A stretch of 63,295 nucleotides of DNA, counting the filler, from Octopus bimaculoides (taxonomy: Eukaryota), in assembly GCF_001194135.2 (NCBI RefSeq). It is 8 parts of 5 records of this genome, joined end to end, with 100 filler letters (N's around TTAATTAATTAA, not from the genome) between each part and the next. Parts side by side here need not be neighbours in the genome. Positions count along the whole stretch, not along the records: positions 1 to 17,682 come from NC_069002.1; 7 more parts are not named here. One strand, 5' to 3'. The notes under the pieces are model-generated. The model worked only from the letters and a program-made list of their open reading frames with translations. It did no database searches and was not told the origin of the DNA. Both the position numbers and the translations under genes were made by a program. Positions within the stretch are counted from its first letter, which is position 1. Each line of letters starts with the position of its first letter. Positions 1 to 18,124 of this stretch are shown here, piece after piece.

Positions 1-91
1 TATATATATATATATATATATATATATCTGTGTGTGTATGTATGTATATAAGAGAGAGAGAGATGTATGCATATATGTATATTATCGTACT

Positions 92-504
92 TTATCGACC
101 GCACATGCTCAAGGTGTGTGTTTTACTTGTCCGCTGCGGTACAGCACTCTGGGGACGACTCCCTCTTAGCACTAGATGTTAAAACACCTGAAAGTCATAG
201 ACAGGTGAGACAACTTGCCTCCAGTCCCATTCAGAAGCGCTGGGTACCGATATTTTGCCATTTTCGTCGTGTGTTTCAGGTCGTTCTTGGTACGACTCAA
301 TTACATGATGTTGATAAGCTACAAAAGTAGTGAAATATCTGTATCCATCGCTCCTAGGTGGGACTGGAAACGAGCTGCTTCACCTTTTTATCACTTTCAG
401 GTGTTTCAACAACCAAGGCTAAGAGGGAGTCGTCCGTAGAGCGCAATGCGCAGCAAACCGGCGAAGAAGCAAAAATACATACATTGAATATGTGCGGTCG
501 ATAA
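92..504. repeat. ~410-bp imperfect palindrome (fold-back / rod-like hairpin)
   Basis: Perfect inverted pairs at 92-106/490-504 (15 bp) and 153-170/418-435 (18 bp). Further paired blocks at 177-199/389-411 and 203-239/349-385, continuing inward to an apical stem 280-284/292-296 with a 7-nt loop. Confidence 0.92.
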
Positions 505-891
505 TATTAACAACACTACCGCTGCGTTTAATTCATAATTGAATGCGTGCGTGCGCGCCTGTGTAACACCAAGTAGCTATTTAACTCGCTTTGAGATCAT
601 GAGTGCACCAAACCACACGTGTGTGTATGCTTGCGCTTTAGCGGATCCTTTTATGAGCAATTGTGCACGCGCTATGCAACTTATGCGAGGACGTTTATAC
701 ATCTATGTCTGTTAACGGTTATTTTTTAATACTTATCTCGCTGTATTGCATGTTCGTTTCTTTTTTGCATCTGTAATTTTATTTTTGAGCTTCTATATAA
801 ATGAAGATATTTCCTTCGTGTTGCTGCTTTTCTTTCTACGAAATGTGTAAATACATTGCAGAACTGTTATTTTAACGAGTTGTATCTATTT

Positions 892-988
892 ATCACCCGA
901 TGAGACACATCAGTACCACCGTATGCTCCTGATAAATTTCCCACTCGTGAGAGATCGATGCTAGGTGTATCGAAACAATTGTCGTGAT
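892..988 (+). ncRNA. Type I hammerhead ribozyme motif (PLE pseudo-LTR type), U4C variant with long stem II
   Basis: Stem I ATCAC(892-896)/GTGAT(984-988); core CCGATGA (897-903); stem II 904-971 closed by G-C; GAAA (972-975); palindromic stem III ACAATTGT (975-982); GTC cleavage triplet ending at 983; AATAATAAAA follows. Confidence 0.7.
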
Positions 989-1852
989 TAATAATAAAAT
1001 TTCTCATATATTCCATCTTTCGTCTTTCATTTACCATATAAAGACATAATTTCAATACGGAGCAAATAATTCAGGAGAAAAATAGTTGCGAAAATATTAT
1101 TGACTGTGTTATTATCTAGTGGAACAATTTAAAAATGACAATAACGGAATCAATAATGTAGGCAATTGCAGACCCCAAAAAAGTATTAAATAGCTGAAGG
1201 ATTAAAATTTATATTAATCAAAGGACATACTAAGTATTTCTACCTGCTGGAAATAACAATCAAAATTCTTATTTAAATCGCAAAAAAAATAAATAAATAA
1301 ATAAAAACTAAAGAAATCAACCGTCTGCGACCAAACGGGTCGAGACAAACTTTCAATATATATTCAAGTATTTGGACATGAATGTATGTTGAAAGTTTGT
1401 CTCGNNNNNNNNNNNNNNNNNNNNNNNNNNNNNNNNNNNNNNNNNNNNNNNNNNNNNNNNNNNNNNNNNNNNNNNNNNNNNNNNNNNCATATAAAATAAC
1501 AAAGGCGGTAATAATATAAATATAAAACCAAAAAGGAAGAATTCAATTGTCTCTAATTAAACTCTGTGTGTGTATTATGTGTGGGTGTGCGTGCGTATGT
1601 GTGAGTGTGTGTGTGTGTGTTTGTGTGTGTGCGCGTAAGGAGATGATAGTCAGGATTTTGATAAATGTCATTTATTGAACGCTTTCATTTCATTAAAGGA
1701 TTCAATCATTATGAATATTCAAAGGGGGCGAAAGCGCTCAATAATACCAATCTAAATCTTGACTACCTCCTTTTAATAATATATGAAATCTGTACACTAC
1801 TACAAAAAGTCTATACATGCACACATACACACGTACACATGCACACATACAT

Positions 1853-1910
<58 letters not shown>

Positions 1911-2849
1911 GTATATACCTACTTAAATATATATATATGGCCTCATTTATATATATTCTTATATATTCTTATATATACGTATAAATATATATGTAGGTGT
2001 GTGTCTATACTTGTCTATCGATATACACATAAAGAGATACAAATATTTGTTTATTTGGTTATTTAATTTTAGTGACCAACATTTGATAAATCAACCATTT
2101 TACAATTTATATCACATAAGGTGAATACGCAGGGCGAAATTTTTTCTATTCAATTGCTCAAATGTTTTCGTCACGTCACCTGAAAAATGTTGACAAACCC
2201 ATTTCTTCAATACCTCTCTATAATATAAAATAATTTTTATAGAAATCATTGTGTTAATATGTTATGGAGTTAGTGAGGCATGTATTATATAAGACGCAGC
2301 TTACAAAGAAGCTATTTAAAAAAATTAATCATAGCATAACAATGTTATGGATTTGTGTTTAAAATTTGTTGACAAGTGGTATTGTGAAGTGTAAATGTAC
2401 ATAAAAGCAATTTTACTAAGTTGTATAGGAACATTCTGGAAAATGAAATATAAACGAAGGGCAAGAAACACAGCAAAGAACATTTCAAGGACAAATGATG
2501 AATTTGACTTGGAGACTTTTTGACTGAAAACGTTTCATATCTGTGGAATAATGTTGATTGATTGCTTTTAAAAACTTTATTCAGTCATTTGTAGAGTTAC
2601 TCAAAAGAGGAAAAGACACTTTTCTGTTTTAAAAATGTTTAATGGTAGTCAGAGGAAGAATGAAAAGCAGTGATCTTGAAGCTTTTCCGGACCTCTGACA
2701 CCAGTGAACAGCGGATTGTTCACTTCACACATCAGACCTGGCCCATAGACTCTTGCAAGAGACTTCGCTAAAGGCACCAAATGGTAGTGTTAAATTGAAC
2801 GTGTACGGTGCATCCGAGACGTTTCCACAAAGTTTCCTTTTACTAAATT

Positions 2850-2896
2850 TCATTCGCAAGGTTTTGGTCATTCGCAAGGTTTTGGTCATTCGCAAG
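2850..2896. repeat. 18-bp tandem repeat (TCATTCGCAAGGTTTTGG x2.6)
   Basis: Direct reading of identical units. Confidence 0.9.
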
Positions 2897-3245
2897 CTTA
2901 AAGGAGTCAGGCAATGGGACCGAACCGAAAACCATAGAGTTGTGACGCGAACATGTTAACCACCATCTAGTTATTTTCAGACCACAAAATGATGACTGCT
3001 CCTTTGTGTTCCCGCAACAACTAACTATATTTAGATTAAGGTGAAATTGGGGATTGAACATGGAGACAACACATACGAACTAGTAACCGTTTGACCGGAT
3101 GTCTGTTGGCTAATCAGCTTGGTTACTTTTAACTAGTAATGTGGTTATTTGAGTTGTTAGAAATAACAGGCAAATCTTTAACTCACACTATACTGTGTTA
3201 AAAAGAAGGACACATTGAACAGCGTAATTTTAGAAACACGAAATG

Positions 3246-3298
3246 ATGGAATGGTCACAAATGGAATGGTCACAAATGGAATGGTCACAAATGGAATG
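3246..3298. repeat. 15-bp tandem repeat (ATGGAATGGTCACAA x3.5)
   Basis: Units start at 3246, 3261, 3276 and 3291. Confidence 0.9.
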
Positions 3299-4222
3299 CC
3301 TGGGATCATATGTGTGCTCTACCTAGAGCTAAATACTAACGGCAATTCGACCATCACGTCTGGGGAAATTTTTATCAATATGTGGCGAATATTGTAAAAT
3401 ATGAAGCAAGGTTAAACGATACGGTTTCAGTCCCTAGATTTCACGTCATTTACTTTATTGTAGGAATACCAATATAAAGTATAATATAAAACAATAAGAA
3501 TACAGCCTCACAGTCCTAAGGCTTTTGTCACGAAGTAAAATTAGTCACATAAGGACTTTTCTAGGAGCTTGGGTTAAAGATCACAACAAACGTCTTTTTT
3601 TTTTGTCGGCTCTCAATCTTGTACTGTTACTGTGACTGTCACTGCTCAATTATAAAATTTTTAGAATATTTTTTTGAGATGGGAGAAGGGCAGAGTCCAT
3701 GGTCCTTTCCGAGGGGTCAGGAGGTAAATTATTATTAAACCATTAATCTGGCCCATTGCTGGCAGTTGAGCGAGCTCTGCTAGCTTCCTTGAAGGGCTAG
3801 GCGTCATTGGTTTATCAAGACAGTCTACCGACAAACTAACCTTAATCCTCTGATGGGCTGCCACAATTTCCGCCAACTAAATCACACTCTTAAAGCATTT
3901 GTAGACCAAAATATTAGTTGATAGAATATATACTTAACGAAGGTACAATCCAATGGAATTGAGCCTTAAAGCATGTTGCTGCAAAGCGATTTTCTTAACT
4001 ATACAGACTTGTCTGCCGTTACTTAACTACGTGTCCATGTCAACAGTCAAATCGTTCAAGTACAATGCTGACGGCCCTAAAGTTTTAACCAGTGAAATAA
4101 TACGGAATAGGCTAGGAATTAATATATATGTGGTGCGATATTCGTACATATTTAGTCTTACTCTAAAATTCAGTCCGGGATTCCTTTGGACAGCCTGCGG
4201 GTGAGATCAGCTAGATTCAACT

Positions 4223-4350
4223 CAGGCCATCAACCTTTTATAGGTTCAAACCAGGCCATCAACCTTTTACAGGTTCAAACCAGGCCATCAACCTTTTACA
4301 GGTTCAAACCAGGCCATCAACCTTTTACAGGTTCAAACCAGGCCATCAAC
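4223..4350. repeat. 29-bp minisatellite x4.4
   Basis: Units CAGGCCATCAACCTTTTACAGGTTCAAAC start at 4223, 4252, 4281, 4310 and 4339; no spacers. Confidence 0.92.
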
Positions 4351-5673
4351 ATCTTACAATAAACGAGCTGCTATATCAGATACAAGTTATTCTTACATTT
4401 AAATAAGTAACCTCCTGTTACTATCGTCTGCGCTTTGGATGAGGTAACTTGAATTGACTGGAGCGAATCTCAGTGATGTGTTCTTTCATAAGTGTTTACA
4501 ATGCTGGTTCGATTCTAGGTTGGGAGAGATCATGAACTTTTCCTTCGTTTAACCCTTCTATTCAAATCACAGATGTTGTTGTTGTAGTTATTCAGCTCCA
4601 TGTCTACCTTGATTGCATTGGTTTATAAAACATTCAACTATGAACCCTCCATCTTATTTTCAAACAAAACATCTGCTATACAAATGCTATTATCCAAATT
4701 GCGCTCTTTATTTTTAAGATTGTAGGATGTGATTGGTTTGAAGAGAATATAGCTTCTTCTTTTTGTATTTTGTATTATAGCAGCTTGCACGATCACTTAC
4801 TGAGCGTCTCATTAGCTAGTAATACAGAAAGTGAGTACATTTTACGTTAGTCCGGATCTTCATAAAACCCGAATTTCTGTAAAACCTTTATGCTTCAAGA
4901 AAACGTTGGCATCCTTTCTCTGTAAAATACCTTCAGTATAACTTAAGGGACCTGAATTATTCAGCATCTCTTGTTATTAATGAAATTCAATGATCTTAGT
5001 TATCTAGATCGATAACAAGTATCGTGTTACTCAATTAAGAGTTTGCCAATATTTTCTGTCAGTGTAACAGTGCTCAGGACATTTAACTACCATTAGATCA
5101 GCGTACCAGTATAGGAATGTAGCTGAGTAAAAATACTCAGAGACATCTGTGGCATTGAAAACTTCATAGTAAAGTGATGATAATGAGTATGATGTGGTAA
5201 ACTGAGAAATTTAATCGAAACTACATCTTTATTGATGAGACTAAATCAATAACTAAACGAGTAATTGTGACGAAAAGGTTGAGTCAACGCAGACTCAGAC
5301 TCACTGCTCCGCTGTATTCCAATTAATTAATTTTAATCAAAATTTCACGGGTTGTTTCCTCTACCCATTTGGATTAGAATCTGTCGTTTAGATAATAACT
5401 TATTAGGGGTGTAATTTTGCTTTCTTCATGAGTATTCTATTGCCTATTTATATGTGTGTATGTGTGTGTGTGTGTTTGTTTGTTTTAATATTTCACTTAG
5501 GCATTGTAAGACTAATAACCTGGTGTAGGACTCAATATACGTATGTTTCGGAACAAAGTATAGAGTATAGAATAAGAAAAAGAGATGACAGGAAAAACAA
5601 TGGTTATCTAATAATCTTCATTGGCTTACAGCTGTAAGCTGATGAAGTTCATAACATAACCATCTCTTTTTCG

Positions 5674-5737
<64 letters not shown>

Positions 5738-5888
5738 TACATATATATATATATAATTTTTTAATCGCATCGAGTTACAAAAGTGATTCCAGACCCGAGG
5801 GTATCGTGCACGAAACTCGGCAATGCAATTTTTGCTAATTAAAAAAAAATTTAATGTAACCAAATTTAGTTTTTTTAAATTCTATTTC

Positions 5889-5926
<38 letters not shown>

Positions 5927-6258
5927 ATGGGAGAGTGAAACACCTAACAACTTACCCGACTAATTGACAGGGTGTCGCTCACCAATGCACTCCAATTTCC
6001 AGGTCGCAAATGAACTGTGCCATTTTTTCTACTTCTTTTGTAGTGGTTCCACGAAACTAGTTCATCTCGCATCACCACCACTCCATTGCATTCATCTATG
6101 AATATTTGACACCGACTAAACGAATCAAACACCAACAAGCCATTGAACCGATTAGTTATCTGTTTAACTTGAATTACCTTTTATCGTCTTGTCAGATTCA
6201 TTGTAAGATAAATCATATTACAAGAAAAGTAAAATAGTTATTTAATATTCGTTGGTGA

Positions 6259-6628
6259 GGGGAGGCGCAATGGCCCAGTGGTTAGGGCAGCGGACTCGCG
6301 GTTTCGATTCCCAGACCAGGCGTTGTGAGTGTTTATTGAGCGAAAATGCCTAAAGCTCCACGAGGCTCCGGCAGGGGTTGGTGGCGAACCCTACTGTACT
6401 CTTTCACCACAACTTTCTCTCACTCTTACTTCCTGTTTCTGTTGTGCCTGTAATTCAAAGGGTCAGCCTTGTCACACTGTATCACGCTGAATATTCCCGA
6501 GAACTACGTTAAGGGTACACATGTCTGTGGAGTGCTCAGCCACTTGCACGTTAATTTCACGAGCAGGCTGTTCCGTTGATCGGATCAACTGGAACCCTCG
6601 ACATCATAAGCGACGGAGTGCCAACAAC
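6259..6628 (+). mobile_element. tRNA-derived SINE, family A, full length with 12-bp TSD
   Basis: tRNA-like head (GGCCCAGTGGTTAGG A-box-like, GGTTTCGATTCCC B-box-like), CAACAACA tail, TSD ATTCGTTGGTGA at 6247-6258 and 6629-6640. Near-identical to copies at 7363 and 42131. Confidence 0.9.
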
Positions 6629-7362
6629 ATTCGTTGGTGAAACAAATCTTTGTATATTCGTATGAAAGACGAAAGAAATAACCCTCTACCTCGGCCTCTC
6701 TTTAACTATGTTGTCTTTGAACACAATAAAACCTTTTAAATCGCAACAATTTCTGTTGATTTCTTTTGGCAATGTTACCATCATAACATTATGTAAATCT
6801 ATGTTTCTAGATTTAAGCCGTCCACGTCAGGACTAGAAATTACTATATCAATAATTGGTTGATGACTTTCTGCAAAGTCCAATTAAGACCCACAGTTGAC
6901 CTGTAGTGCAGCCCTCAGATAATCACAAGTCGTTCTCAAGCTAACAAATACCAGCGAACTCCCTACCCCAAATCTTCCTCTCTTCTTTGTTAATGAGAAG
7001 GCAAATTAAGGTTTACATCCATAGAATTCCTCTTTCTTTGTCATGGAGTTGGGAAAGTTTAAAAATTTGAAAGCTATTTTAGTTTGATAATACATAGCGA
7101 TTTGTCTTTTTACCCCTTACAATTTCCGCCAATGAAATAGTCTGCCCTAGACAGAATAAAAAAAAAACCATTCGTTTAAAACACTACAATCACTAGATGA
7201 CATAGGACTGCTCCCCGCTCAACCTCTTCTGCCGCTACTATAACGGCCTCTGCTCCTCGAAACCAGTTGGCTACGATGGTGGTGGTGGTGGAGATGATGG
7301 CAGTGAGGCTATGATAATAATGGTGATAGTGATCAAAGTAGTAATGTCAGTAGTTATGATAG

Positions 7363-7726
7363 TGGAGGCGCAATGGCCCAGTGATTGGGGCAGCGGTCAT
7401 AGGTTCGCGGTTTCGATTCCCAGACCGGGCGTTGTGAGTGTTTATTGAGCGAAAATACCTAAAGCTCCACGAGGCTCCAGTAGGGGATGGTGGCGAACCC
7501 TGCTGTACTCTTTCACCACAACTTTCTCTCACTCTTACTTCCTGTTTCTGTTGTGCTTGTAATTCAAAGGTTCAGCCTTGTCACGCTGAATATCCCCGAG
7601 AACTACGTTAAGGGTACACGTGTCTGTGGAGTGCTCAGCCACTTGCACGTTAATTTCACGAACAGGCTGTTCCGTTGATCGGATCAACTGGAACCCTCGA
7701 CGTCGTAAGCGACGGAGTGCCAACAC
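7363..7726 (+). mobile_element. tRNA-derived SINE, family A, 11-bp TSD
   Basis: Same sequence as 6259-6628; TSD AGTTATGATAG at 7352-7362 and 7727-7737; inserted in a GAT/GGT-rich tract. Confidence 0.9.
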
Positions 7727-8089
7727 AGTTATGATAGCAGTTGTGATGGTGATGAAGGTGGTGGCAATAATGATGGTGACGATGATGTTGTGGTTTTTAT
7801 TGGTGACGGTGGTGGTGGTGATGAATGATCGCGGTGATCGTTGTATCATCTGCGGTAATGATTGTCATAGTATGACAGTAGGAGGTGCGATCTAATGGAG
7901 TTTAGCTGCTATTTCCAACGAGTCAACAGACAGCTAAGCGGCTTGCCCGTTGGGTTCTGTCTATCACAGAACACAGACATACATTGTCGTCTAGTTAATG
8001 GTATTGGCCATGAACAAAGTCCTTTTCTAAAAGCTAATAAAGGGTAAATGGTAAAGACTGCCTTCGGTTGTAAATGACCATGGGATTGC

Positions 8090-8320
8090 AGCCAGAAAGT
8101 TCCCCTCCACGACACAAGACCGGGCAAGGTTGTTTATGGAAAACCAGTAGGCCTCCCCTCTCCACGCCACTAATGTTATCCAAGGGAAAGGCAAAGGTCA
8201 ATACAGCTTGGCACCAGTGACGTCACAGCTCATTTCTACAGCTTAGTGAACTGGAGCAACGTGAAATAAAGGGTCTTGCTGAAGAACTCAGCACACAGCC
8301 TGGTCCGTGAGGTAGCAGGT
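8090..8320 (-). mobile_element. SINE family B fragment
   Basis: Shares the block AGCTGAGTGAACTGGAGCAACGTGAAATAAAG...TTGCT with 32100-32352 and, in reverse, 34258-34470. Confidence 0.6.
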
Positions 8321-8339
8321 GATGAGGTGGGGGGGGGGA

Positions 8340-9110
8340 ATTCCGCATACTCCTGCACAAATGACTTGCTGGGGCACTCCCTGCGATAATGACCGCGATG
8401 GCGTTGACGCGGAGAATGGCGGGGCTCATTTCTCCGACGGGTCGTTGTTGTCCCTATTTTGCGGAGGAAATTGGTAGCACGGAGTACGAAAACACCTGAC
8501 GCCTTGACNNNNNNNNNNNNNNNNNNNNNNNNNNNNNNNNNNNNNNNNNNNNNNNNNNNNNNNNNNNNNNNNNNNNNNNNNNNNNNNNNNNNNNNNNNNN
8601 NNNNNNNNNNNNNNNNNNNNNNNNNNNNNNNNNNNNNNNNNNNNNNNNNNNNNNNNNNNNNNNNNNNNNNNNNNNNNNNNNNNNNNNNNNNNNNNNNNNN
8701 NNNNNNNNNNNNNNNNNNNNNNNNNNNNNNNNNNNNNNNNNNNNNNNNNNNCCATCGAATAGAAAGAGGGCTATTCCGTCAGGCTGCTTATTGTACCCGA
8801 GGTCAAGACCTACTTGTTCAAGTTGAGACGGGAAGCCAACCGCATCAAGGCCCCTTCTGATCATGTCGTTCAGAGCGGCATGTCGGAGGAATCAGCCCGC
8901 GCTAAGGCTGCAAGATAATGGGTGCCTGCCAGCCGAATTCGTCTACTACCGCTCCACAGCGGCATTTGTGCGGCCCACACCCAAGGAGAGCGAGGCGTTG
9001 GGCCACTCCGATACGGGTGCACTCATCATCTAGAAGGGTACTGGTAGATGAAGAGGGTACCGCTATTTAGCTGCGAGGCAGAACGAAGGTAGGCTAGACT
9101 GCGCTGGTCT
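8340..9110 (-). mobile_element. CRE-clade non-LTR retrotransposon, decayed 3' part (zinc knuckle + restriction-like endonuclease)
   Basis: Minus-strand peptides across frameshifts: DQRSLAYLRSASQLNSG, LLDDECTRIGVAQRL, PHKCRCGAVVDEFG, RHAALNDMIRRGLDAVGFPSQLEQVGLDLGYNKQPDGIALF, SGVFVLRATNFLRKIG, AILRVNAIAV. These match the CRE-type CCHC + PD-(D/E)xK C-terminus. An assembly gap lies inside. Confidence 0.8.
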
Positions 9111-9326
9111 AATAAATATATTGTATTGAAATCTAATTTATTTTGTGATGCTTGCGTTATTATATGATCGTATTCACACACGCAAGCGTGCACCCGTATC
9201 GGAGTGGCCCAACGCCTCGCTCTCCTTGGGTGTGGGCCGCACAAATGCCGCTGTGGAGCGGTAGTAGACGAATTCGGCTGGCAGGCACCCATTATCTTGC
9301 AGCCTTAGCGCGGGCTGATTCCTCCG
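8884..9326. repeat. Perfect 139-bp inverted duplication with 165-bp spacer
   Basis: 8884-9022 is the exact reverse complement of 9188-9326 (checked base by base). Confidence 0.95.
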
Positions 9327-9635
9327 TACGTACATTCAAACACATCTACATGCGCATACCCGCCCACATATACATAATCACATACTTATATGCCCACATA
9401 TGCAAATATGAACACGTACACATACAGATACGTACGTACACAGATATACAATCACACATATGAATGCACCCATCTAGATGTCACCACAAGCGCACACGCA
9501 CATTCACACTCACACACAGTACATACCAGACATACCAGCACTGACGCATACATGCACGTACATCCAGATATATCCAAATATATCTCGCTGCGACGGTAAA
9601 TAGCCGTAAACGCCCAAATATAAAGAGATACACAC

Positions 9636-9668
<33 letters not shown>

Positions 9669-9932
9669 GGTACACGCTAAATGAAGTAATTTAACCTATT
9701 ATCTTATGCAGTCACGATTTTATCTCCCAATCCCATATTAGAATATAAGGGCAGGCTGGAAACGCAGTCAACCTCACATAAACAATCATTTAGTAGTGCA
9801 AATGATCATAACACGGCGAGCATCAAAATTCTAATTAGAAGTAAAAGTAATGGTTTGAAGAGAAGGACAAAATCTTAATCATTTATAGTTTTTCAATTAT
9901 TTCAGGTTAGCTGCTTGACAGAATTGTTAGAG

Positions 9933-10610
9933 AAGGGGTTCTCAATCTTTGTTTGCTATCTTAGTTTGGTGGGCCTCCATAGCCATTCAATGTTTAAAAA
10001 CTAGTATTAGAGAAACTTCCTCCAAAATTTCTATTTTGTTTGTCACTCATTAACTTGTGTAGGTTAAACTATGTAAAACATTAGAGAAAGAAACCTAGCT
10101 GTTTCTCGCAATACATACCAATAGATACATCAAAAGCAGGGGTTCTCAACCATTTTTTATCTATGGACCCCTTTGATTACTAATTTATTCTGGTGAACCC
10201 CATAACCATTTGATGTTTAATAACTAGTTTTGTAGAAACTTCTTCGAAAATTCCTATTTTGCTTGCCGCACATTAACTTATGTAGGTTGCTCCTTCGGCG
10301 TGTGATCTACAAGGGAGATTATTTTAGATTACTTTTAAAATTATTTTCTACATACTTAGCATTATAAATGTATTTTTCCAAAATTATTACAATTTTATTA
10401 AGAAAACCCATATAATAATTAAAATAAGCGGGTAGATTATCCACCAAAGTAAATTTACTCACGTAGATCACACGGAAAGTAGCACTAATACAAAGTAAAC
10501 AAAAAAATAACCTAAAGTAATCTCTCTTGTAGATCACACGACAAAGGAGCATCGGTTGAACTACGTAAAACGTTCGAGAAAGAAACCGCTGTCTATGCTC
10601 TTTTGTCGTA
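9933..10610 (+). mobile_element. Two tandem partial copies of a hAT-like MITE
   Basis: Both start with (C/A)AGGGGTTCTCAA (9933, 10136) and share the CTAG...AGAAACTTC...CTATTTTG...TAACTT.TGTAGGTT body. The second copy is split by a nested TIR element. Confidence 0.55.
10289..10550. mobile_element. ~260-bp MITE with 33-bp terminal inverted repeats, nested in the hAT-like MITE
   Basis: GCTCCTTCGGCGTGTGATCTACAAGGGAGATTA (10289-10321) versus the reverse complement of 10518-10550, 3 mismatches. The host MITE sequence resumes after it. Confidence 0.8.
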
Positions 10611-10964
10611 ATGACGGTCAATCACACAGTAATTTCCCTTTGTTTAACGGTCATTTTTCACAGGAACTTTCAATGGCCGGATAACTGAAAAAATGTTGGC
10701 GTGGGTTCCCATCCCGGCATCCGAAACTCGGAGTTTTATCATGGCTACCAAATAAGTGTCACATATTTTTACAGATAAATTCCTCTATTTATGTAATATC
10801 GAGGTCTCTTTCTTTCTTTTGTTGTCCTTCCTGTCAAATATATATATATATATANNNNNNNNNNNNNNNNNNNNNNNNNNNNNNNNNNNNNNNNNNNNNN
10901 NNNNNNNNNNNNNNNNNNNNNNNNNNNNNNNNNNNNNNNNNNNNNNNNNNNNNNNNNNNNNNNN

Positions 10965-10996
<32 letters not shown>

Positions 10997-11029
10997 ATGT
11001 GCGTGCGTGTACTATTACCTGCAGGTTAG

Positions 11030-11470
11030 GATTTTCGGAACGGACCTATCGATAACTTCCAGAAATCCCTGGCCTGGCAATGCTACCGGGGAGCTTTGCT
11101 GGGTTGAGACAAACTCTACAGACGCGTAAGTGCTGTGAGAAGGATCTGTCCGAGGTGTGCGCAAGGCGACGAAACCGTCCTGCAAGTACGCGTCCAGTGT
11201 CGGTGCATTACTGACTTGTGGAGCGTTGTCGAACAGCTGTTGTCGTCTGTAGGATGGATCCGGTTATCAGCCGAGTCCATCGTGAAGTCGGTTGTTCCTA
11301 TGAGGAACTCCCTACTTTGGGGGAATTTTTTAATGTTTAATTGTTTTGTTAATTGTCATGGTTATTTTATTGTTTACTCGATGTTTTATGCTAAAACCCC
11401 ACGTAACCCTAGCTCTTGTTTGTGTCTATTTGTTTTTTGTGTTAGGTCCCTGTAGCTAATAAAGAAACGA
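11030..11470 (+). mobile_element. Tx1/L1-clade LINE 3' fragment (C-terminal zinc knuckle + 3' UTR)
   Basis: IDNFQKSLAWQCYRGA...CPRCAQGDETVLQ...QC...LW resembles the L1/Tx1 C-terminal motif; T-rich UTR and AATAAA near 11458. Confidence 0.6.
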
Positions 11471-11516
11471 TTGTTCCTATAGTAGAAAGAACTATTAATA
11501 TTATTAAGATCAGTAA

Positions 11517-11553
<37 letters not shown>

Positions 11554-11557
<4 letters not shown>

Positions 11558-11957
11558 AGTTTTATTTTTATAACGTGCTTTCACTTCACTACCAAGGGCA
11601 GCTCTGTGTGCCTTGGGTATATGCTATGGTTTGCTGTGATGCTCTTATGGTTACCGTATTGAAAGTGTTTGGCGTAGGATGTGTGCAGTACAATTTTCTG
11701 TATGTTGTATATATTTGTAAGTCCTGGTGTTTTTGTTATGTATTTGTCTGAATAGTTTTTTATCATATCTAATGCGCCCACTATGATAGGAATCGTTATT
11801 ATTTTTAGATTCCACATTCGAGTTACTTCTATTTCCAGGTCTTTGTATTTCGAAAGTTTCTCCATTTCTTTTCGAGAAACATTGTCATCTGTTGGTATTG
11901 ATACATCAATTAGAAAGCAATTTTTTTTCTTCATGATCTCTGACAACTATATCTGGC
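11554..11957 (-). mobile_element. 5'-truncated R4/Dong-like LINE (RLE endonuclease end) embedded in (TAA)n
   Basis: RPDIVVRDHEE...CFLIDVSIPTDDNVSRKEMEKLSKYKDLEIEVTRMW...IPIIVGALDMI is a PD-(D/E)xK RLE domain; (TTA)n arrays on both sides. Confidence 0.85.
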
Positions 11958-11989
11958 CTCATTATTATTATCATTATTATTATTATTAT

Positions 11990-12272
11990 TAAGTGAAAGA
12001 GCAGCGCATACCATCAAAGTGACACTGGGGTACAAATATACGAAGCCCAATATACCCATCATGACTACACATGTGATAAAGGTACACCACGCACAGACAT
12101 CACAACCATATGTGGGCAACATGGTAGCCTCGTGACAAGATAAACAATGCAATTAGAATTTTCTTCCGGTCGAATAGCCCATCCCATTCAAAAGGTTCCT
12201 GAATAAGGGTTGTTTAAGAATGATCTCAACGCATGGCTATGATGCCCCACCCCCACTACTTGAACTCGTGAT
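11990..12272 (-). mobile_element. Dispersed repeat X with (AAT)n tail (SINE or LINE 3' end)
   Basis: Second copy at 55910-56167; both abut a (TTA)n array on the + strand. Confidence 0.7.
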
Positions 12273-12810
12273 CAGAGATGCATTTGACTGTAAGTGTAAA
12301 AAAACCCACTGCGATGAATTTTTTACACGAGCTGTTTGCGAGATATGGTGTCTCAGACGCGACAGTGTGTGACAATGGAACGCAATTTGTGTCTTTTGAA
12401 TTTAAAAAGTTCTGCAAAACGTTCGCTACAGAACATGTAACTACGGCACCATACCATCCCAGATCTTACGGACAAGCAGAACGCTTTGTTGATACGATCA
12501 AGAGAGCCCTAAGAAAGTCTAATAAGATAGTTACTGATGAGGTAGCACTACAACAATTCTTAAGAATATACCGTGTGACACCAAATCCAAATACGCCAGC
12601 AGGTATGTCACCAGCAGAGCTGATGTTTGCGAGGAAAGTAAAATCAGTCTTCGACAAATTGGTTCGTGGCAAGAAAAAAAGAAAAATTGCAATGGCAAAT
12701 ACAACAAAACTTTTCAAAAATGGTGAAAAGGTATTTGTGAGGGCATATATGAACGGAAAATAGAGTTGGGAAGATGGCGCGATTATCAAACGCGTAGGAA
12801 AAAGGTTGTT
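12273..12810 (+). mobile_element. Ty3/Gypsy integrase (rve) fragment
   Basis: LFARYGVSDATVCDNGTQFVSFEF...TAPYHPRSYGQAERFVDTIKRAL...YRVTPNP...SPAELMFAR: integrase D,D35E core region. Confidence 0.9.
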
Positions 12811-13197
12811 GCCTGCTCTACGTACATCTAACCGGATTCCTTCCCTATGTGCGCATGTGTGCGTGTGTGAGTTTGTGTATGTGTGTGTGTGTGCGAGCGC
12901 ATGCGTGTGCGTGAGTGTGTGTGTTTTTGTGCGTGCGTGTATGCGTGCGTGTATGCGTGTGTGAAAAGCCTTAAGAGGTAAGATAATTTCTATGTAGACA
13001 AGAGAGATTTATAACACATAATATCTATTCAACTAAACTAGAGATAAAAAAAAATGCAAAATTCCAGAAGCGAACTATTTAAATATAGTTAACAAAAGAG
13101 GCTAAGAGACAAGATCATATTCACTCTAATACTTATCAGTGTGTGCGTGGTTGGAAACGCGTGCATGAACAAACATGTATAATCATACATGTATGTG

Positions 13198-13248
<51 letters not shown>

Positions 13249-13671
13249 NNNNNNNNNNNNNNNNNNNNNNNNNNNNNNNNNNNNNNNNNNNNNNNNNNNN
13301 NNNNNNNNNNNNNNNNNNNNNNNNNNNNNNNNNNNNNNNNNNNNNNNNNNNNNNNNNNNNNNNNNNNNNNNNNNNNNNNNNNNNNNNNNNNNNNNNNNNN
13401 NNNNNNNNNNNNNNNNNNNNNNNNNNNNNNNNNNNNNNNNNNNNNNNNNNNNNNNNNNNNNNNNNNNNNNNNNNNNNCAATATATATATATATATATATA
13501 TATATAAGAGGATAATTTTATAACTTCGTTAAAGCAAAAATAAAATTAGGACTGCAGCTGGAAGTGGTCAGGTGACACCGAGGCGGAAGGAGAAATAAAT
13601 TGAAAGGTATAATGAACAAATGCTCCAATCAGTCAAAACAACAATATCATTTATATTATTTATTTAAATTT

Positions 13672-13798
13672 ACGGATATTTGTCCTCATCTGGTCTGTTG
13701 TTAACACAACGTATCGGCTGATATACCCGCTAGGCTTCATCAGGTGTGTTGGGGAAATTTCGAACCTGGGTTCTCATTCCTAAGGTATTTTTCGATGT
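13672..13798 (-). mobile_element. PLE pseudo-LTR fragment with degenerate hammerhead (same family as 43427-43669)
   Basis: Reverse complement of 13704-13747 reads ACAC-CTGATGA-AGCCTAGCGGGTATATCAGCC-GATA-CGTT-GTGT; GAAA is mutated to GATA and stem II is disrupted. Confidence 0.75.
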
Positions 13799-13819
13799 TG
13801 TTGTTATTATTATTTAGTA

Positions 13820-14035
13820 GTCTTATTTTTATCACGTGCTTTCACTGCACTACCGAGCACAGCTCTTTGTGCCCTGGGTATGAGCTGTGGTTTGTTGTGA
13901 TGCTCTTATTTTACTATATTTAAAGTGTTTTACGTAGGGTGTGCGCAGTACTTAGTAGTGCTATTTTCTGTATGTTATATATATATATATTCCTTGATAA
14001 GTTGCTCTTATTATAGATATATACTTGTCTGGTAT
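13820..14035 (-). mobile_element. Second 3' end of the R4/Dong-like LINE
   Basis: Clear similarity to 11570-11760; adjacent to a TTA-rich tract. Confidence 0.7.
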
Positions 14036-14044
14036 GCCGTAGTG

Positions 14045-14500
14045 CTGCATAATTCTCCATAAGCGGTGTTATTGTATGGGGCTGAGACATGGCGAACAAC
14101 AGTTAAGTCAAATAAGCAAATACAATCATTCATCAACAGGTGCTTGCGCAGTATACTTAAAATCAGATGGCCCGAACACATAAGCAATATGGAGCTATGG
14201 CAAAGAACGAATCAAGTTTCGAGTAGGGAGCAAATATTTAAGAAAAAGTGGAAGTGGATTGGTAGCATAATTGGAAAGGACACACCAAATGTAGTGAAAA
14301 GTGCTTTACAGTGGAATCCGGATGGCTATAGAAAGAGGGGTAGGCCTAAGAACTTGTGGCGTAGATCAACACAAAAGGAACTAGAGAAAGGGGGACATTC
14401 ATGGCAGAGTATAAGTACAGAAGCGAGAAATTATGCGACATGGAATTCAATTATAAGTGGCCTATACTCCGCGTTGGAGGGTTAAAGGTAAGAAAGAATA
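14045..14500 (+). mobile_element. RTE-clade LINE C-terminal fragment
   Basis: LLYGAETW...FINRCLRSILKIRWPEHISNMELW...KWKWIG...ALQWNPDGYRKRGRPKNLWRR: RTE post-RT motifs. Confidence 0.88.
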
Positions 14501-14824
14501 TATATATATAATAAATCTCTGAGCGAGGTATAAACAGTAGTTGCACGACATCGTGAGGTATATTTGCCACCTAAATGTGGCCGACCCTTAAGGGTCGATG
14601 CTACTGTAGCTTGTAGCCCCAGGAAGACATCTCCTCCAGCTGGCTATTGACACATTTTCTCTGCCCTGTCAGTATTTGCAGAGGAAAGTAATCTTTCCCA
14701 TCTCCAGCCTGACGTGATACACACGGACCCGAGTTACTGGGTATTGACCCGTCATCAGCGAGTGACAACCATCGGTTGGCGATGGGAAGTGGTTCCCAAT
14801 GCAAATATATATATAGTGTTTCCA

Positions 14825-15260
14825 GTTACGAAAACTCACTGATCTCGAAAAAGTGGAAACAAGCAATAATACATCTCTGAGCGAGGTATAAACAGTGGTT
14901 TATACCTTTGTTTCACATTGCTTCTCCTGTGTTCGTTGATTTTTGCGACGACTGAAATGAAGGAACAGCGTGCTTCCGTGAAATTCTGTTTTCTGCTACT
15001 AAAACACTTGTCACACTTCAAACAGATTACAAGGACGCTGCCATGAGCAAAACACAGGTTTGCGAGTGGTTTCCACGCTTTAGGAATGGTCACTTGTCGC
15101 TTGAAGACCAACCTCGTTCAGAATGACCTCCCGGACGAATGAAAACATCAAGAAAATTCAGAACTGATCTTGGAGGACCGTCACCGAACAACTGATAAAC
15201 TTGTTGATATCAATGGTGTGTCCTGGAACTCCTGCAAACGAATTTTGAACGAGGAATTTT
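14825..15260 (+). mobile_element. Mariner transposase N-terminal (HTH) pseudogene fragment
   Basis: MKEQRASVKFCFLL and, across frameshifts, KTQVCEWFPRFRNGHLSLEDQPRS and ILEDRHRTTDKLVDINGVSWNSCKRILNEE. Confidence 0.8.
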
Positions 15261-16650
15261 ATAAATGTAAATAAGTAAACGTACACAAATGATGTAAATA
15301 AATCTAAATAGATTTAAATAAATAAGGAACGTGGATTAGTTATCTCGCGGGTGATGTAGAAAAACTATATATTACCATAATGTNNNNNNNNNNNNNNNNN
15401 NNNNNNNNNNNNNNNNNNNNNNNNNNNNNNNNNNNNNNNNNNNNNNNNNNNNNNNNNNNNNNNNNNNNNNNNNNNNNNNNNNNNNNNNNNNNNNNNNNNN
15501 NNNNNNNNNNNNNNNNNNNNNNNNNNNNNNNNNNNNNNNNNNNNNNNNNNNNNNNNNNNNNNNNNNNNNNNNNNNNNNNNNNNNNNNNNNNNNNNNNNNN
15601 NNNNNNNNNNNNNNNNNNNNNNNNNNNNNNNNNNNNNNNNNNNNNNNNNNNNNNNNNNNNNNNNNNNNNNNNNNNNNNNNNNNNNNNNNNNNNNNNNNNN
15701 NNNNNNNNNNNNNNNNNNNNNNNNNNNNNNNNNNNNNNNNNNNNNNNNNNNNNNNNNNNNNNNNNNNNNNNNNNNNNNNNNNNNNNNNNNNNNNNNNNNN
15801 NNNNNNNNNNNNNNNNNNNNNNNNNNNNNNNNNNNNNNNNNNNNNNNNNNNNNNNNNNNNNNNNNNNNNNNNNNNNNNNNNNNNNNNNNNNNNNNNNNNN
15901 NNNNNNNNNNNNNNNNNNNNNNNNNNNNNNNNNNNNNNNNNNNNNNNNNNNNNNNNNNNNNNNNNNNNNNNNNNNNNNNNNNNNNNNNNNNNNNNNNNNN
16001 NNNNNNNNNNNNNNNNNNNNNNNNNNNNNNNNNNNNNNNNNNNNNNNNNNNNNNNNNNNNNNNNNNNNNNNNNNNNNNNNNNNNNNNNNNNNNNNNNNNN
16101 NNNNNNNNNNNNNNNNNNNNNNNNNNNNNNNNNNNNNNNNNNNNNNNNNNNNNNNNNNNNNNNNNNNNNNNNNNNNNNNNNNNNNNNNNNNNNNNNNNNN
16201 NNNNNNNNNNNTATACAAACACGCGCGCGCACACACACGCATGCACACACATGCATTCACACACACACACTCACACACACATTTTAGGGTGACCCCAAAA
16301 AACAAATTTGGGAAACCCTGAACCGTCACTCCATCGATCTGTGAGGCTTGACAGATAGACACTCCACCTGAAACTTGAAGAAAATTCCATTATATTGTGT
16401 GTTGTCAATAAGCGATTCAGCATTTTACTTTCAGCATAAATGAAAATTTTACCGTAATAGATAGCTATTAATTCAGATACAGTAAAAGTATTGCATTGCC
16501 AATATATGAAACAGTTAGTGCAGTGAGCAAATCATCTGAACAATGCAGTAAGCACACACACACAAACACACACACTATAGCCTCTGGTCGATCACAAGCC
16601 TTGGGAGTGGACTTGCTAGACGAAAAGTGAAAGTTAAAAGATGCCAGTCG

Positions 16651-16783
<133 letters not shown>

Positions 16784-16961
16784 TTGATTCCTGATGTGAA
16801 ACCGTGTGTTGAAACAGATATTGCTATATTTTGGAATGGTAATTTTTTAATTTTTTTGTTTCTACCGAATAAACACACACACACTATATATTTGTTCTTC
16901 ACTCGTTTATTACTGTTCTTATTTTATTTTATGTCCATTGTCTAGAAACCTTATATATAGC

Positions 16962-17370
16962 TACAGGTGCAGGAGTGGCTGTGTGGTAAGTATCTTGCTT
17001 ACCAACCACATGGTTCTGGGTTGAGTCCCACTGCGTGGCACCTTGGGCGAGTGTCTTTTACTATAGCCTCGGACCGACCAAAGCCTTGTGAGTGGATTTG
17101 GTAGACGGAAACTGAAAGAAGCCCGTCGTATGTATGTATATATATATACGTGTGCGTGTGTGTGTCTGTCCCCCTTCCACAACATCGCTTGACAACCGAT
17201 GCTGGTGTGTTTACGTCCCCGTAACTTAGCAGTTCGGCAAAAGAGACCCGACAGAATAAGTAACGAGGCTTACAAAGAATAAATCCTAGAGTTGATTTGC
17301 TCGACTAAAGGCGCTGCTCCAGCATTGCCGCAGTCAATGACTGAAACAAGTAAAAGAATAAAAGAATAGA
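16962..17370 (+). mobile_element. tRNA-derived SINE family C with internal microsatellite
   Basis: Head GGAGTGGCTGTGTGGTAAG...GGTTGAGTCCC, core GGCACCTTGGGCGAGTGTC, tail GACTGAAACAAGTAAAAGAATAAAAGAATA. Partial relatives near 16575, 17430, 25318-25685 (-), 27720 and 61540-61760 (-). Confidence 0.8.
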
Positions 17371-17682
17371 AAAATAGTGCGTGTTTATTTGGGAAAAAAA
17401 ATGACCATTCCGAAATATAACATTTTGTGTGTGTGTGTGTGTATGTATGTCTTTTGTTTCTGTTTGTACCCCTCCATCGCTGGACAACAGATGTAGTTGT
17501 GTTTACGTCCCCATAACACAGCGTTTCGGCAAAACGTGATGCTAGAATAACAGCCAGGCATTAAAAAAAAGTTAGTCCTGAGGTCGATTTGATTGTCTAA
17601 AACTCTTCAAGTCGATGCTCGTTCATGACCGTTCATGACCGCAGTCAAATGACGGAAAGGAGTAATAGATAAAAGATATATA

Positions 17683-17782
17683 NNNNNNNNNNNNNNNNNN
17701 NNNNNNNNNNNNNNNNNNNNNNNNNNTTAATTAATTAANNNNNNNNNNNNNNNNNNNNNNNNNNNNNNNNNNNNNNNNNNNN
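17683..17782. other. Assembly spacer: 44 N + TTAATTAATTAA + 44 N (also 22818-22917, 28456-28555, 34083-34182, 39101-39200, 52903-53002, 61878-61977)
   Basis: Seven identical 100-bp spacers; the 12-mer puts a stop in all six frames. Confidence 0.97.
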
Positions 17783-18124
17783 CTCTTTGTGAAAGTATCT
17801 GTCACTACAGTATCGAAATGTGATTGTTTCAGTTAGTGGAATAGTTTCATTTTTAAAGTGAAAGTATTTGACATGAGTGTTTTTGTTTCACTTTTGACAC
17901 GTAATACTTAAATAGTGGAGGAGATATTATGTTGCTGTGTGCTCGAACTCTGCAAGAAGTTAATAATTTTTTTTGACTAAAACACAACTGGAACCCTAAG
18001 TAAGGCATGTGTAAACTTTGAATGAAATTGGTTGCGTAGTTCTCGAGTTTTAGGGATTCACACAGACAGACAGACAGACAGACAGACACACACACACACA
18101 TTCTCATTTTTATATATATAGATA

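What the first reader, a model, noticed from the sequence alone, without database searches (positions are those of the whole stretch)
92..504. ~410-nt rod-like fold-back whose arm mismatches are mostly transitions
Seen: nearly the whole segment pairs with itself from the ends to a 7-nt apical loop, with two one-sided bulges on the right arm (about 308-319 and 454-461). In the 37-bp block 203-239/349-385 all 10 mismatches are transitions: 4 would be G-U pairs on the + transcript and 6 on the - transcript. Many CpGs survive, so this is not simple CpG decay. Inference: it could be (a) a structured element kept pairable on both polarities, in the viroid/retrozyme size range, (b) a hairpin-RNA/siRNA precursor or ADAR substrate, which would matter in a coleoid with extensive A-to-I editing, or (c) an old fold-back MITE or two head-to-head copies of one repeat. 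No ORF or known repeat here explains it.
Basis: partly seen in the sequence, partly recalled or inferred. Interest (0 to 1): 0.75.

Follow-up and report, generated by a model that had tools for sequence, protein, structure and literature searches.

The report
Decayed inverted repeat with hammerhead relic
The 413-base hairpin in this octopus genome is real but looks like two old, head-to-head copies of a short mobile element decaying neutrally, one arm of which still carries a recognisable, probably dead, hammerhead ribozyme motif.

Summary
The fold-back at 92-504 is real. Both strands fold at about -215 kcal/mol (z about -18). The arms are 75% alike over 187 aligned bases.

The "mostly transitions" pattern is ordinary. 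There are 31 transitions and 15 transversions (2.07), against 1.63 among old retroelement relics of the same genome (P=0.28). The run of 10 transitions has P=0.17. Transitions that leave a G-U pair split 15 on the + RNA and 16 on the - RNA, so nothing shows selection for pairing.

New here: a type I hammerhead-like motif at 295-359 on the + strand. Rfam HH9 gives 22 bits (gathering score 52), E=0.005 for the region. It has helices I, II and III, GAAA and C17, and a U3-A8 core pair in place of C3-G8, a natural variant known from Penelope-like elements. A structural descriptor matches once per roughly 33 Mb of random sequence, and not at all in about 144 kb of other octopus DNA. This copy folds poorly as a ribozyme.

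Best reading (about 0.5): an old head-to-head pair of roughly 200-bp tails of a hammerhead-bearing retroelement (Penelope-like or retrozyme lineage). Main rival: a Tc1/mariner-type fold-back MITE. No family copies, orthologues or RNA reads could be obtained.

The parts
1..83 (.). Flanking microsatellite block: (TA)13, then TG, TATG and GA runs. A possible insertion target.
   Evidence: Penelope-like elements show insertion bias for microsatellites, including (TA)n (PMC8557442). Only the left flank is microsatellite.
92..290 (-). Left arm. Read on the - strand, it is the second, more decayed copy of the unit. Relative to the right arm it lacks about 13 nt covering the helix I 5' strand and UUAC bulge, and it has A where the right arm has G12.
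   Evidence: Arm alignments. No hammerhead hit on the - strand even at E<=10.
285..291 (.). 7-nt apical loop (TCTTGGT), closed by the 6-bp stem 279-284/292-297. This is the junction of the two inverted copies.
   Evidence: Minimum-free-energy structure; sequence.
296..504 (+). Right arm: the copy of the unit in + orientation, starting with the hammerhead-like motif and ending at the precise outer end ...GTGCGGTCGATAA.
   Evidence: On its own the arm folds no better than shuffles (z = -0.72).
295..359 (+). Type I hammerhead-like motif. UUAC bulge 301-304. Helix I 306-310/346-350 (5 bp, then an A305-C351 mismatch). Core TTGATAA 311-317 (U3...A8). Helix II 318-322/327-331. GAA 332-334. Helix III 335-337/342-344 with loop TCTG. 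C17 at 345. Predicted cleavage between 345 and 346.
   Evidence: Rfam Hammerhead_HH9 scores 22.0 bits (gathering 52), with E=0.0051 on 481 nt, 0.015 on 1.4 kb and 0.19 on the whole window. My descriptor finds it as the only hit in the window. The chance rate is 15 hits per 490 Mb of random sequence and 3 hits in 363,285 random fold-backs. There are none in 177 kb (about 144 kb excluding N) of other O. bimaculoides loci. The hammerhead fold of this copy scores +2.9 kcal/mol against a local minimum free energy of -17.8.
93..94 (.). TA dinucleotide just outside TCGACCGCACAT..., paired with TA at 502-503. A possible Tc1/mariner-type target-site duplication (rival reading).
   Evidence: Sequence. 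TA is its own complement and the context is AT-rich, so this is weak.
502..503 (.). Right-hand TA of the possible TA target-site duplication.
   Evidence: Sequence.

Best explanation
The fold-back is a dead, solitary, head-to-head inverted pair of roughly 200-bp copies of the 3' part of a short hammerhead-bearing retroelement, of the lineage of Penelope-like element (PLE) terminal repeats and animal non-LTR retrozymes. It lies in non-coding DNA of Octopus bimaculoides chromosome CM046622.1.

Inferred mechanism: reverse transcription at the target started at the element's 3' end, which gives the two precise, identical outer ends at 92 and 504. A second, inverted, 5'-truncated copy was made at the same event, as PLE insertions often show. 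The junction is now the 7-nt loop at 285-291, and the inner ends differ by about 13 nt. The right arm therefore keeps a complete type I hammerhead at 295-359 on +, while the left arm keeps only its 3' part.

Since then both arms have drifted neutrally, about 0.15 substitutions per site each. The rod-like RNA fold is a by-product of the DNA inverted repeat and is not a selected structure. The hammerhead of this copy is most likely inactive or very weak.

Shown: the inverted repeat, the neutral mismatch statistics, the hammerhead-like motif and its rarity by chance. Inferred: the retroelement origin, the one-event formation and the inactivity.
For: Fold-back and arm identity.

Neutral decay:
- Transitions to transversions are 31:15, against 1.63 in old LTR relics of the same genome (P=0.28).
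- G-U-preserving transitions split 15 on + and 16 on - (P=1.0).
- The transition run has P=0.17 and the longest identical block P=0.21.
- Single arms are not structured (z = -0.7 and -0.4).

Hammerhead:
- Rfam HH9 hit at 292-368 on +, E=0.0051 for the region over all 4227 families.
- It matches HH9-specific features: the UUAC bulge exactly 6 nt before the core, a 4-5 bp helix II with a CAAAAG loop, GAAA, a short helix III and C17.
- The only two deviations in the conserved core positions, C3 to U and G8 to A, form the U3-A8 covariation reported as a natural variant of PLE hammerheads, about 1,300 mostly single motifs in Schistosoma (PMC4209133).
- The architecture (helix I 6 bp, helix II 4 bp, short helix III with a small loop) is the one that paper calls canonical for metazoan type I motifs (its helix III is 1-2 bp; here 3 bp).
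- The descriptor chance rate is about 2.5e-5 per element and 8e-6 per random fold-back.
- There was no hammerhead hit at E<=5 in 61 kb, and no descriptor hit in 177 kb, of other O. bimaculoides DNA.

PLE habits:
- An inverted 5'-truncated copy next to the main copy, the hammerhead in terminal repeats near the 3' end, and a microsatellite target bias (PMC8557442).
- Paired hammerheads 100-700 bp apart on opposite strands (PMC4209133).
- PLEs are an annotated repeat order in Octopus, with an expansion at Jukes-Cantor distance about 0.2 (PMC13282606). The arms are about 0.15 each from their common ancestor.

The left arm keeps C at 11.1 where the right arm has U, which hints at a more canonical ancestor.
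Against: - The hammerhead hit is far below Rfam's gathering score (22 against 52 bits), and E is only 0.19 when the whole window is the search space.
- My descriptor thresholds were set after seeing the candidate.
- The hammerhead secondary structure of this copy is unfavourable (+2.9 against -17.8 kcal/mol for an alternative fold). Helix II closes with a G-U pair where G10.1-C11.1 is usual.
- The left arm shows no hammerhead.
- There is no RT or GIY-YIG coding remnant in the three + frames of 505-5300, nor in the ten longest ORFs of the window, which all lie at 7.5-15 kb.
- No other copy of the arms was seen in the window or in 177 kb of the same genome, so the family, its consensus and its ends are unknown.
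- Only the left flank is microsatellite.
- The TA...TA flanks fit a Tc1/mariner MITE equally well.
Confidence: 0.5

Rival explanations
1. It is a fold-back MITE: a non-autonomous DNA transposon whose terminal inverted repeats take up almost the whole element. It would have been moved by a Tc1/mariner-type transposase that duplicates TA. The hammerhead-like motif would then be a coincidence.
For: The ends are precise and symmetrical, and the pairing runs from the very ends. TA flanks TCGACC...GGTCGA on both sides. The size of 413 bp is in the MITE range. Tc1/mariner is the largest TIR superfamily, by families and insertions, among recently active elements in Octopus vulgaris (73 families; PMC13282606). 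There is no coding capacity.
Against: A hammerhead-like match of this quality is expected about once per 33 Mb of random sequence, and in about 1 of 100,000 random fold-backs. Rfam gives E=0.005 for the region. TA is palindromic and sits in AT-rich DNA, so it is weak evidence for a duplication. The termini do not start with the usual CAGT or YAGGT motifs (from my own knowledge). GC is 46% against about 36% in the surroundings. No second copy was found in about 160 kb of non-N sequence from the same genome.
Confidence: 0.25
2. The whole 413-nt unit is one monomer of an animal non-LTR retrozyme, a rod-shaped RNA that is cut by its hammerhead and circularised. This locus would be a dead single-copy cDNA of it. 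The arm similarity would then come from rod pairing, not from duplication.
For: The size fits the 170-400 nt range, and mussel units are 350-390 bp with highly self-paired circRNAs (PMC7229834). A type I hammerhead-like motif is present. Dispersed monomers are reported in vertebrate genomes (bioRxiv 10.64898/2026.07.22.740005). GC is below 50%.
Against: There is no tandem or direct repeat. The linear copy would have to be opened exactly in the terminal loop opposite the apex, roughly a 2% coincidence (inference). There is no excess of G-U over A-C on the ribozyme strand (15 against 16). The predicted cleavage site at 345/346 is not at the ends of the copy. Transcription could not be tested.
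Confidence: 0.1
3. It is a local inverted duplication of ordinary non-mobile DNA, formed for example by fold-back repair at the short palindrome GTCGT...ACGAC and now decaying. The hammerhead likeness would be chance.
For: No other copy was found anywhere we could look. The mismatch pattern is neutral. Both arms begin at the apex with the same ACGAC pentamer.
Against: The same chance argument against the hammerhead match applies. The GC content is distinctly higher than in the flanks. The sharp outer ends have no residual homology beyond them.
Confidence: 0.1
4. It is a working hairpin-RNA gene: it is transcribed, folds into a roughly 190-bp imperfect duplex and is processed into small RNAs or heavily A-to-I edited.
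For: The duplex is very stable on either strand. Coleoids have high ADAR activity (from my own knowledge).
Against: There is no sign of selection for pairing on either strand. No Rfam small-RNA family matches beyond noise. There are no expression data. At 75% arm identity the duplex is decaying, not maintained.
Confidence: 0.05

Closest known systems
Hammerhead ribozymes in the terminal repeats of Penelope-like elements, including the U3-A8 core variant of Schistosoma Cercyon elements (Cervera & de la Pena 2014, PMC4209133)
   Same: Type I topology, a short helix III and the U3-A8 covariation in the core. These motifs occur mostly as single, dispersed, truncated copies. Pairs 100-700 bp apart on opposite strands are described. 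The host order of elements is present in Octopus.
   Different: No PLE coding sequence is nearby. Helices I and II here look like the 'canonical' animal type (6 bp and 4 bp with UUAC and CAAAAG), not the minimal PLE type. Homology to an octopus PLE repeat is not shown.
Animal non-LTR retrozymes (Cervera & de la Pena 2020, PMC7229834; Li et al. 2026 preprint)
   Same: Unit size, low GC, a type I hammerhead, a highly self-paired predicted RNA, and the existence of dispersed monomers.
   Different: The defining tandem arrangement is absent. Self-pairing here comes from two inverted copies, and each copy alone is unstructured. No circular RNA is shown.
Rfam Hammerhead_HH9 (RF02275), the intronic type I hammerhead of amniotes
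   Same: Best-matching model. The UUAC bulge, the 6-position helix I, a helix II with an A-rich loop, GAAA and C17 are all aligned in register.
   Different: It scores 22 bits against a gathering score of 52. U3/A8 replace C3/G8, a G-U pair closes helix II, and the outer helix I is mostly unpaired. It comes from a different phylum and genomic setting.
Stowaway-like / Tc1-mariner fold-back MITEs
   Same: A length of about 400 bp, pairing from the very ends, TA on both sides and no coding capacity.
   Different: It carries a hammerhead-like motif, is richer in GC than its surroundings, and no family copies were seen.
Avsunviroidae-type rods with hammerheads of both polarities
   Same: A rod of about 400 nt, with the ribozyme-bearing segment facing its near-complement.
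   Different: It is encoded in nuclear DNA, only one polarity has a recognisable motif, and there is no evidence of RNA replication.

Membership tests
Hammerhead ribozyme, type I | Three helices around a junction, with helix I open and helices II and III closed | tested here: met
   The covariance-model alignment and the descriptor agree: helix I 306-310/346-350, helix II 318-322/327-331, helix III 335-337/342-344.
Hammerhead ribozyme, type I | Conserved core CUGANGA ... GAAA ... U-H | tested here: inconclusive
   The core reads UUGAUAA ... GAAA ... U-C. C3 to U and G8 to A are the only core changes, and together they form the U3-A8 covariant reported in natural PLE hammerheads (PMC4209133). 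The 10.1-11.1 pair is G-U.
Hammerhead ribozyme, type I | Score at or above the Rfam gathering threshold | tested here: not met
   22.0 bits against 52.
Hammerhead ribozyme, type I | Self-cleavage | not testable with these tools
   Thermodynamics argue against an efficient monomeric fold: +2.9 against -17.8 kcal/mol.
Animal non-LTR retrozyme | Head-to-tail tandem repeats of a 170-400 bp unit, each with a hammerhead | tested here: not met
   There is no direct repeat of the unit in the window, and only one hammerhead-like hit.
Animal non-LTR retrozyme | Monomer RNA that is highly self-paired | tested here: inconclusive
   The 413-nt unit is (z = -18). Each roughly 200-nt arm is not (z = -0.7 and -0.4).
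Animal non-LTR retrozyme | Expressed as linear and circular RNA | not testable with these tools
Penelope-like element insertion | RT plus GIY-YIG ORF between terminal repeats | tested here: not met
   No Pfam domain in the + frames of 505-5300. The ten longest ORFs give only an rve fragment 12 kb away. The - frames were not scanned. A solitary truncated copy would lack the ORF.
Penelope-like element insertion | Inverted 5'-truncated copy abutting another copy, with precise 3' ends | tested here: inconclusive
   The geometry fits: identical outer ends at 92 and 504, and inner ends about 13 nt apart. The same geometry fits a MITE.
Penelope-like element insertion | Sequence homology to a PLE terminal repeat of the same genome | not testable with these tools
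   No cephalopod genome or repeat library was searchable. 177 kb of sampled O. bimaculoides DNA held no copy.
MITE (Tc1/mariner-type) | Terminal inverted repeats | tested here: met
   Arms 92-124/472-504 are 85% complementary, and pairing continues to the apex.
MITE (Tc1/mariner-type) | TA target-site duplication | tested here: inconclusive
   TA is present at 93-94 and 502-503, but it is palindromic and sits in AT-rich DNA. No longer direct repeat lies at the ends. ATATTA at 79-84 and 504-509 is offset by 7 nt.
MITE (Tc1/mariner-type) | Many dispersed copies with the same ends | tested here: inconclusive
   There are none in the window or in 177 kb of other loci, which is far too little sequence to decide.
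hpRNA / ADAR substrate | Transcription, small RNAs or A-to-G differences in reads | not testable with these tools

The most novel reading that the evidence does not exclude
Octopus carries a living or recently living family of retrozyme-like elements whose roughly 410-nt rod-shaped RNA is released by a U3-A8 hammerhead and circularised. This locus would be one dead copy. Its long duplex, if transcribed, would also be a natural ADAR or Dicer substrate in a heavily editing animal.
Probability: 0.07. Interest if true: 0.6.

Novelty: new member of a known kind. Interest (0 to 1): 0.3.

Why it matters
As it stands this is an ordinary decaying repeat, and the transition-rich mismatches need no special explanation. 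The modest point of interest is the hammerhead relic. My literature search found no paper that describes hammerhead-bearing elements in cephalopods. A U3-A8 type I motif in Octopus would extend the known range of that natural core variant. It would also give a handle, in the form of a search model, for finding Penelope-like or retrozyme families in cephalopod genomes. If such a family is expressed, its hairpin or circular RNAs would be relevant to the dsRNA and editing biology of coleoids.

Tried and rejected
- **Selection on structure.** G-U-preserving transitions split 15 against 16, and the run of 10 transitions and the 18-nt perfect block are within chance. I rejected selection.
- **CpG decay.** Rejected, because CpG observed/expected is 0.95.
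- **Other copies in the window.** blastn and nhmmer found none.
- **Copies through the protein databases.** Exact look-up of the 87-aa ORF found nothing. A homology search with it found 4 word-sharing candidates, none significant.
- **Conserved 18-mer in metagenome and viral contigs.** There were 5 microbial chance hits with no extended homology.
- **tRNA or SINE head.** No tRNA and no A/B boxes by eye.
- **Protein domains.** The local ORFs have none. The + frames of 505-5300 have none. The longer window ORFs give only an rve fragment.
- **Sampling the same genome through integrase paralogues.** Eight loci totalling 177 kb held no copy of the arms and no hammerhead.
- **Hammerhead on the - strand or left arm.** Not found at E<=10.

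Full report
**Where it is.** The window is Octopus bimaculoides, assembly GCA_001194135.2, chromosome record CM046622.1, near 15.43 Mb. A window ORF (12314-12763) is on record there. The piece is non-coding draft sequence with five N gaps and many microsatellites. No tRNA was found. The only protein signal is an rve integrase fragment of an LTR retroelement at 12278-12760.

**Observation.** The fold-back is real and far beyond chance. Positions 92-504 fold at -215.0 kcal/mol on + and -215.4 on -, against -112 and -109 for shuffles, giving z about -18 on both strands.
- The arms align from the very ends (92/504) to a 6-bp stem, 279-284/292-297, with a 7-nt loop.
- The right arm has extra bases near 301-319 and at 445-446 and 456-460.
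- Over 187 aligned positions there are 141 matches, 31 transitions and 15 transversions.
- CpG is not depleted: 0.95 observed/expected.

**Is the mismatch pattern special? No.**
- A run of at least 10 transitions among 46 mismatches has permutation P=0.17.
- The ratio of 2.07 is not above that between old LTR-element relics of the same genome (2719:1664 = 1.63; binomial P=0.28).
- Every transition keeps a G-U pair in exactly one polarity, and the split is 15 on + against 16 on - (P=1.0). Neither strand has been favoured, and 'pairable on both polarities' is not what the data show.
- The longest perfect block (18 nt, 153-170) has P=0.21.
- Each arm alone is no more structured than shuffles (z = -0.72 and -0.42).

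So the rod is the by-product of a DNA-level inverted repeat whose two copies have drifted apart. The K2P distance is 0.31, about 0.15 per arm. With the octopus calibration of PMC13282606 (Jukes-Cantor 0.2 at about 56 My), this is some tens of millions of years. That estimate is an inference.

**New finding: a hammerhead-like motif.** A permissive Rfam scan gives one non-trivial hit in the element, Hammerhead_HH9 (type I) at 292-368 on +. It scores 22.0 bits against a gathering score of 52. E is 0.0051 for the 481 nt searched, 0.015 for 1.4 kb and 0.19 for the whole window, over all 4227 families. The alignment is in register throughout:
- UUAC bulge at 301-304.
- Helix I at 306-310/346-350.
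- Core UUGAUAA at 311-317.
- Helix II GCUAC/GUAGU, with an A-rich loop.
- GAA at 332-334.
- Helix III AUA/UAU, with a 4-nt loop.
- C17 at 345.

The only core deviations, C3 to U and G8 to A, together make the U3-A8 pair. Cervera & de la Pena (PMC4209133) describe this pair as a natural covariant of hammerheads in Penelope-like elements, with about 1,300 mostly single motifs in Schistosoma. The same paper defines the canonical animal type I motif as helix I of 6 bp, helix II of 4 bp and a very short helix III (1-2 bp). That is close to the architecture here, where helix III has 3 bp.

**Controls for the hammerhead.** I wrote a structural descriptor: helix I at least 5 bp, CUGANGA or UUGANAA, helix II at least 4 bp, GAAA, helix III at least 3 bp, and H17.
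- It hits the window once, at this site.
- It hits 15 times in 490 Mb of Markov-random sequence, about 2.5e-5 per element.
- It hits 3 of 363,285 simulated fold-backs.
- It gives no hit in 177 kb (about 144 kb excluding N) of other O. bimaculoides loci.
- Rfam gives no hammerhead hit at E<=5 in 61 kb of those loci. Everything it reports there is a microsatellite artefact.

Caveats: the descriptor thresholds were chosen after seeing the candidate. The score is well under Rfam's threshold. The hammerhead fold of this copy is thermodynamically poor, +2.9 kcal/mol against -17.8 for an alternative local fold. Helix II closes with a G-U pair. I take the motif to be a genuine hammerhead relic (about 0.7-0.8) that is probably inactive now.

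**The left arm.** Read on the - strand, it aligns to the 3' two-thirds of the motif. It lacks about 13 nt (the helix I 5' strand and bulge) and has A for G12. No hammerhead is detected there. It keeps C at 11.1 where the right arm has U, a weak hint of a more canonical ancestor.

**What it most likely is.** PLE insertions are typically 5'-truncated. They often carry an inverted 5'-truncated copy that abuts another copy and forms inverted repeats. They have the hammerhead in the terminal repeats near the 3' end, and they prefer microsatellite targets (PMC8557442). Opposite-strand hammerhead pairs 100-700 bp apart are reported. Animal retrozymes of 170-400 nt are now regarded as non-autonomous PLE derivatives, and they also occur as dispersed monomers. 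PLEs are an annotated order in Octopus, with an old expansion.

The geometry here is two precise outer ends, unequal inner ends, the ribozyme at the inner (5') end of the + copy, and a (TA)n/(TG)n block on the left. This fits a single insertion that produced a head-to-head pair of roughly 200-bp element tails. I give this 0.5.

**Rivals.**
- **Tc1/mariner-type fold-back MITE (0.25).** The TA...TA flanks and perfect terminal symmetry favour it. The hammerhead match would then be a 1-in-10^4 to 10^5 coincidence.
- **The whole rod as one retrozyme monomer (0.1).** Size and self-pairing fit. There is no tandem repeat, no G-U excess on the ribozyme strand, and the copy would have to be opened exactly at the far loop.
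- **A local inverted duplication of non-mobile DNA (0.1).**
- **A functional hairpin-RNA gene (0.05).**

None can be excluded without family copies.

**What could not be done.** No cephalopod genome, repeat library or read set was searchable. The routes tried are listed in the field for tried and rejected steps. The copy number, the true ends, any target duplication, the orthologous site and transcription all remain open.

**Verdict.** The special meaning attached to the transitions is not supported. The element is best filed as an old inverted pair of a hammerhead-bearing retroelement tail, a new member of a known kind. Interest is low to moderate.

Noticed in passing
window 12278-12760 (+): A fragment of a retroelement integrase. 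Pfam rve gives E=4e-7, just under the cut-off. There are 177 homologues, with the named ones all Octopus 'K02A2.6-like' proteins at up to 75% identity. The annotated 149-aa product (12314-12763) identified the window as O. bimaculoides CM046622.1.
   Followed up: yes
window 4216-4358; 3246-3298; 2850-2896: Three short minisatellites: a 29-nt unit x4.9 (95% match), a 15-nt unit x3.5 (100%) and an 18-nt unit x2.6 (100%). Origin unknown.
   Followed up: no
window 1341-1404: A second, small hairpin with 29-nt arms (90% complementary) and a 6-nt loop, directly abutting the N gap at 1405. Only sub-threshold miRNA-family hits were found. A palindrome at a gap edge may be an assembly effect.
   Followed up: partly
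window 1-83, 1565-1990, 5677-5734, 12856-12963, 16661-16780; L008 19080-19240; L009 about 1040-18660 (many sites): The TA/TG microsatellites produce many Rfam 'evalue' hits to mir-297, mir-3149, mir-466 and similar families, with E down to 1e-9. These are low-complexity artefacts, and they warn that Infernal E-values are unreliable on such sequence.
   Followed up: partly
window 82-100: The first 9 nt of the element (TTATCGACC, 92-100) have a near-copy 10 nt upstream (TTATCGTAC, 82-90). ATATTA occurs at 79-84 and again at 504-509. This may be a trace of the insertion event or chance in AT-rich DNA.
   Followed up: partly
L011 8982-9452 (-): An annotated MULE-domain (Mutator-like transposase) gene next to an integrase gene in another O. 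bimaculoides locus, fetched only for sampling.
   Followed up: no
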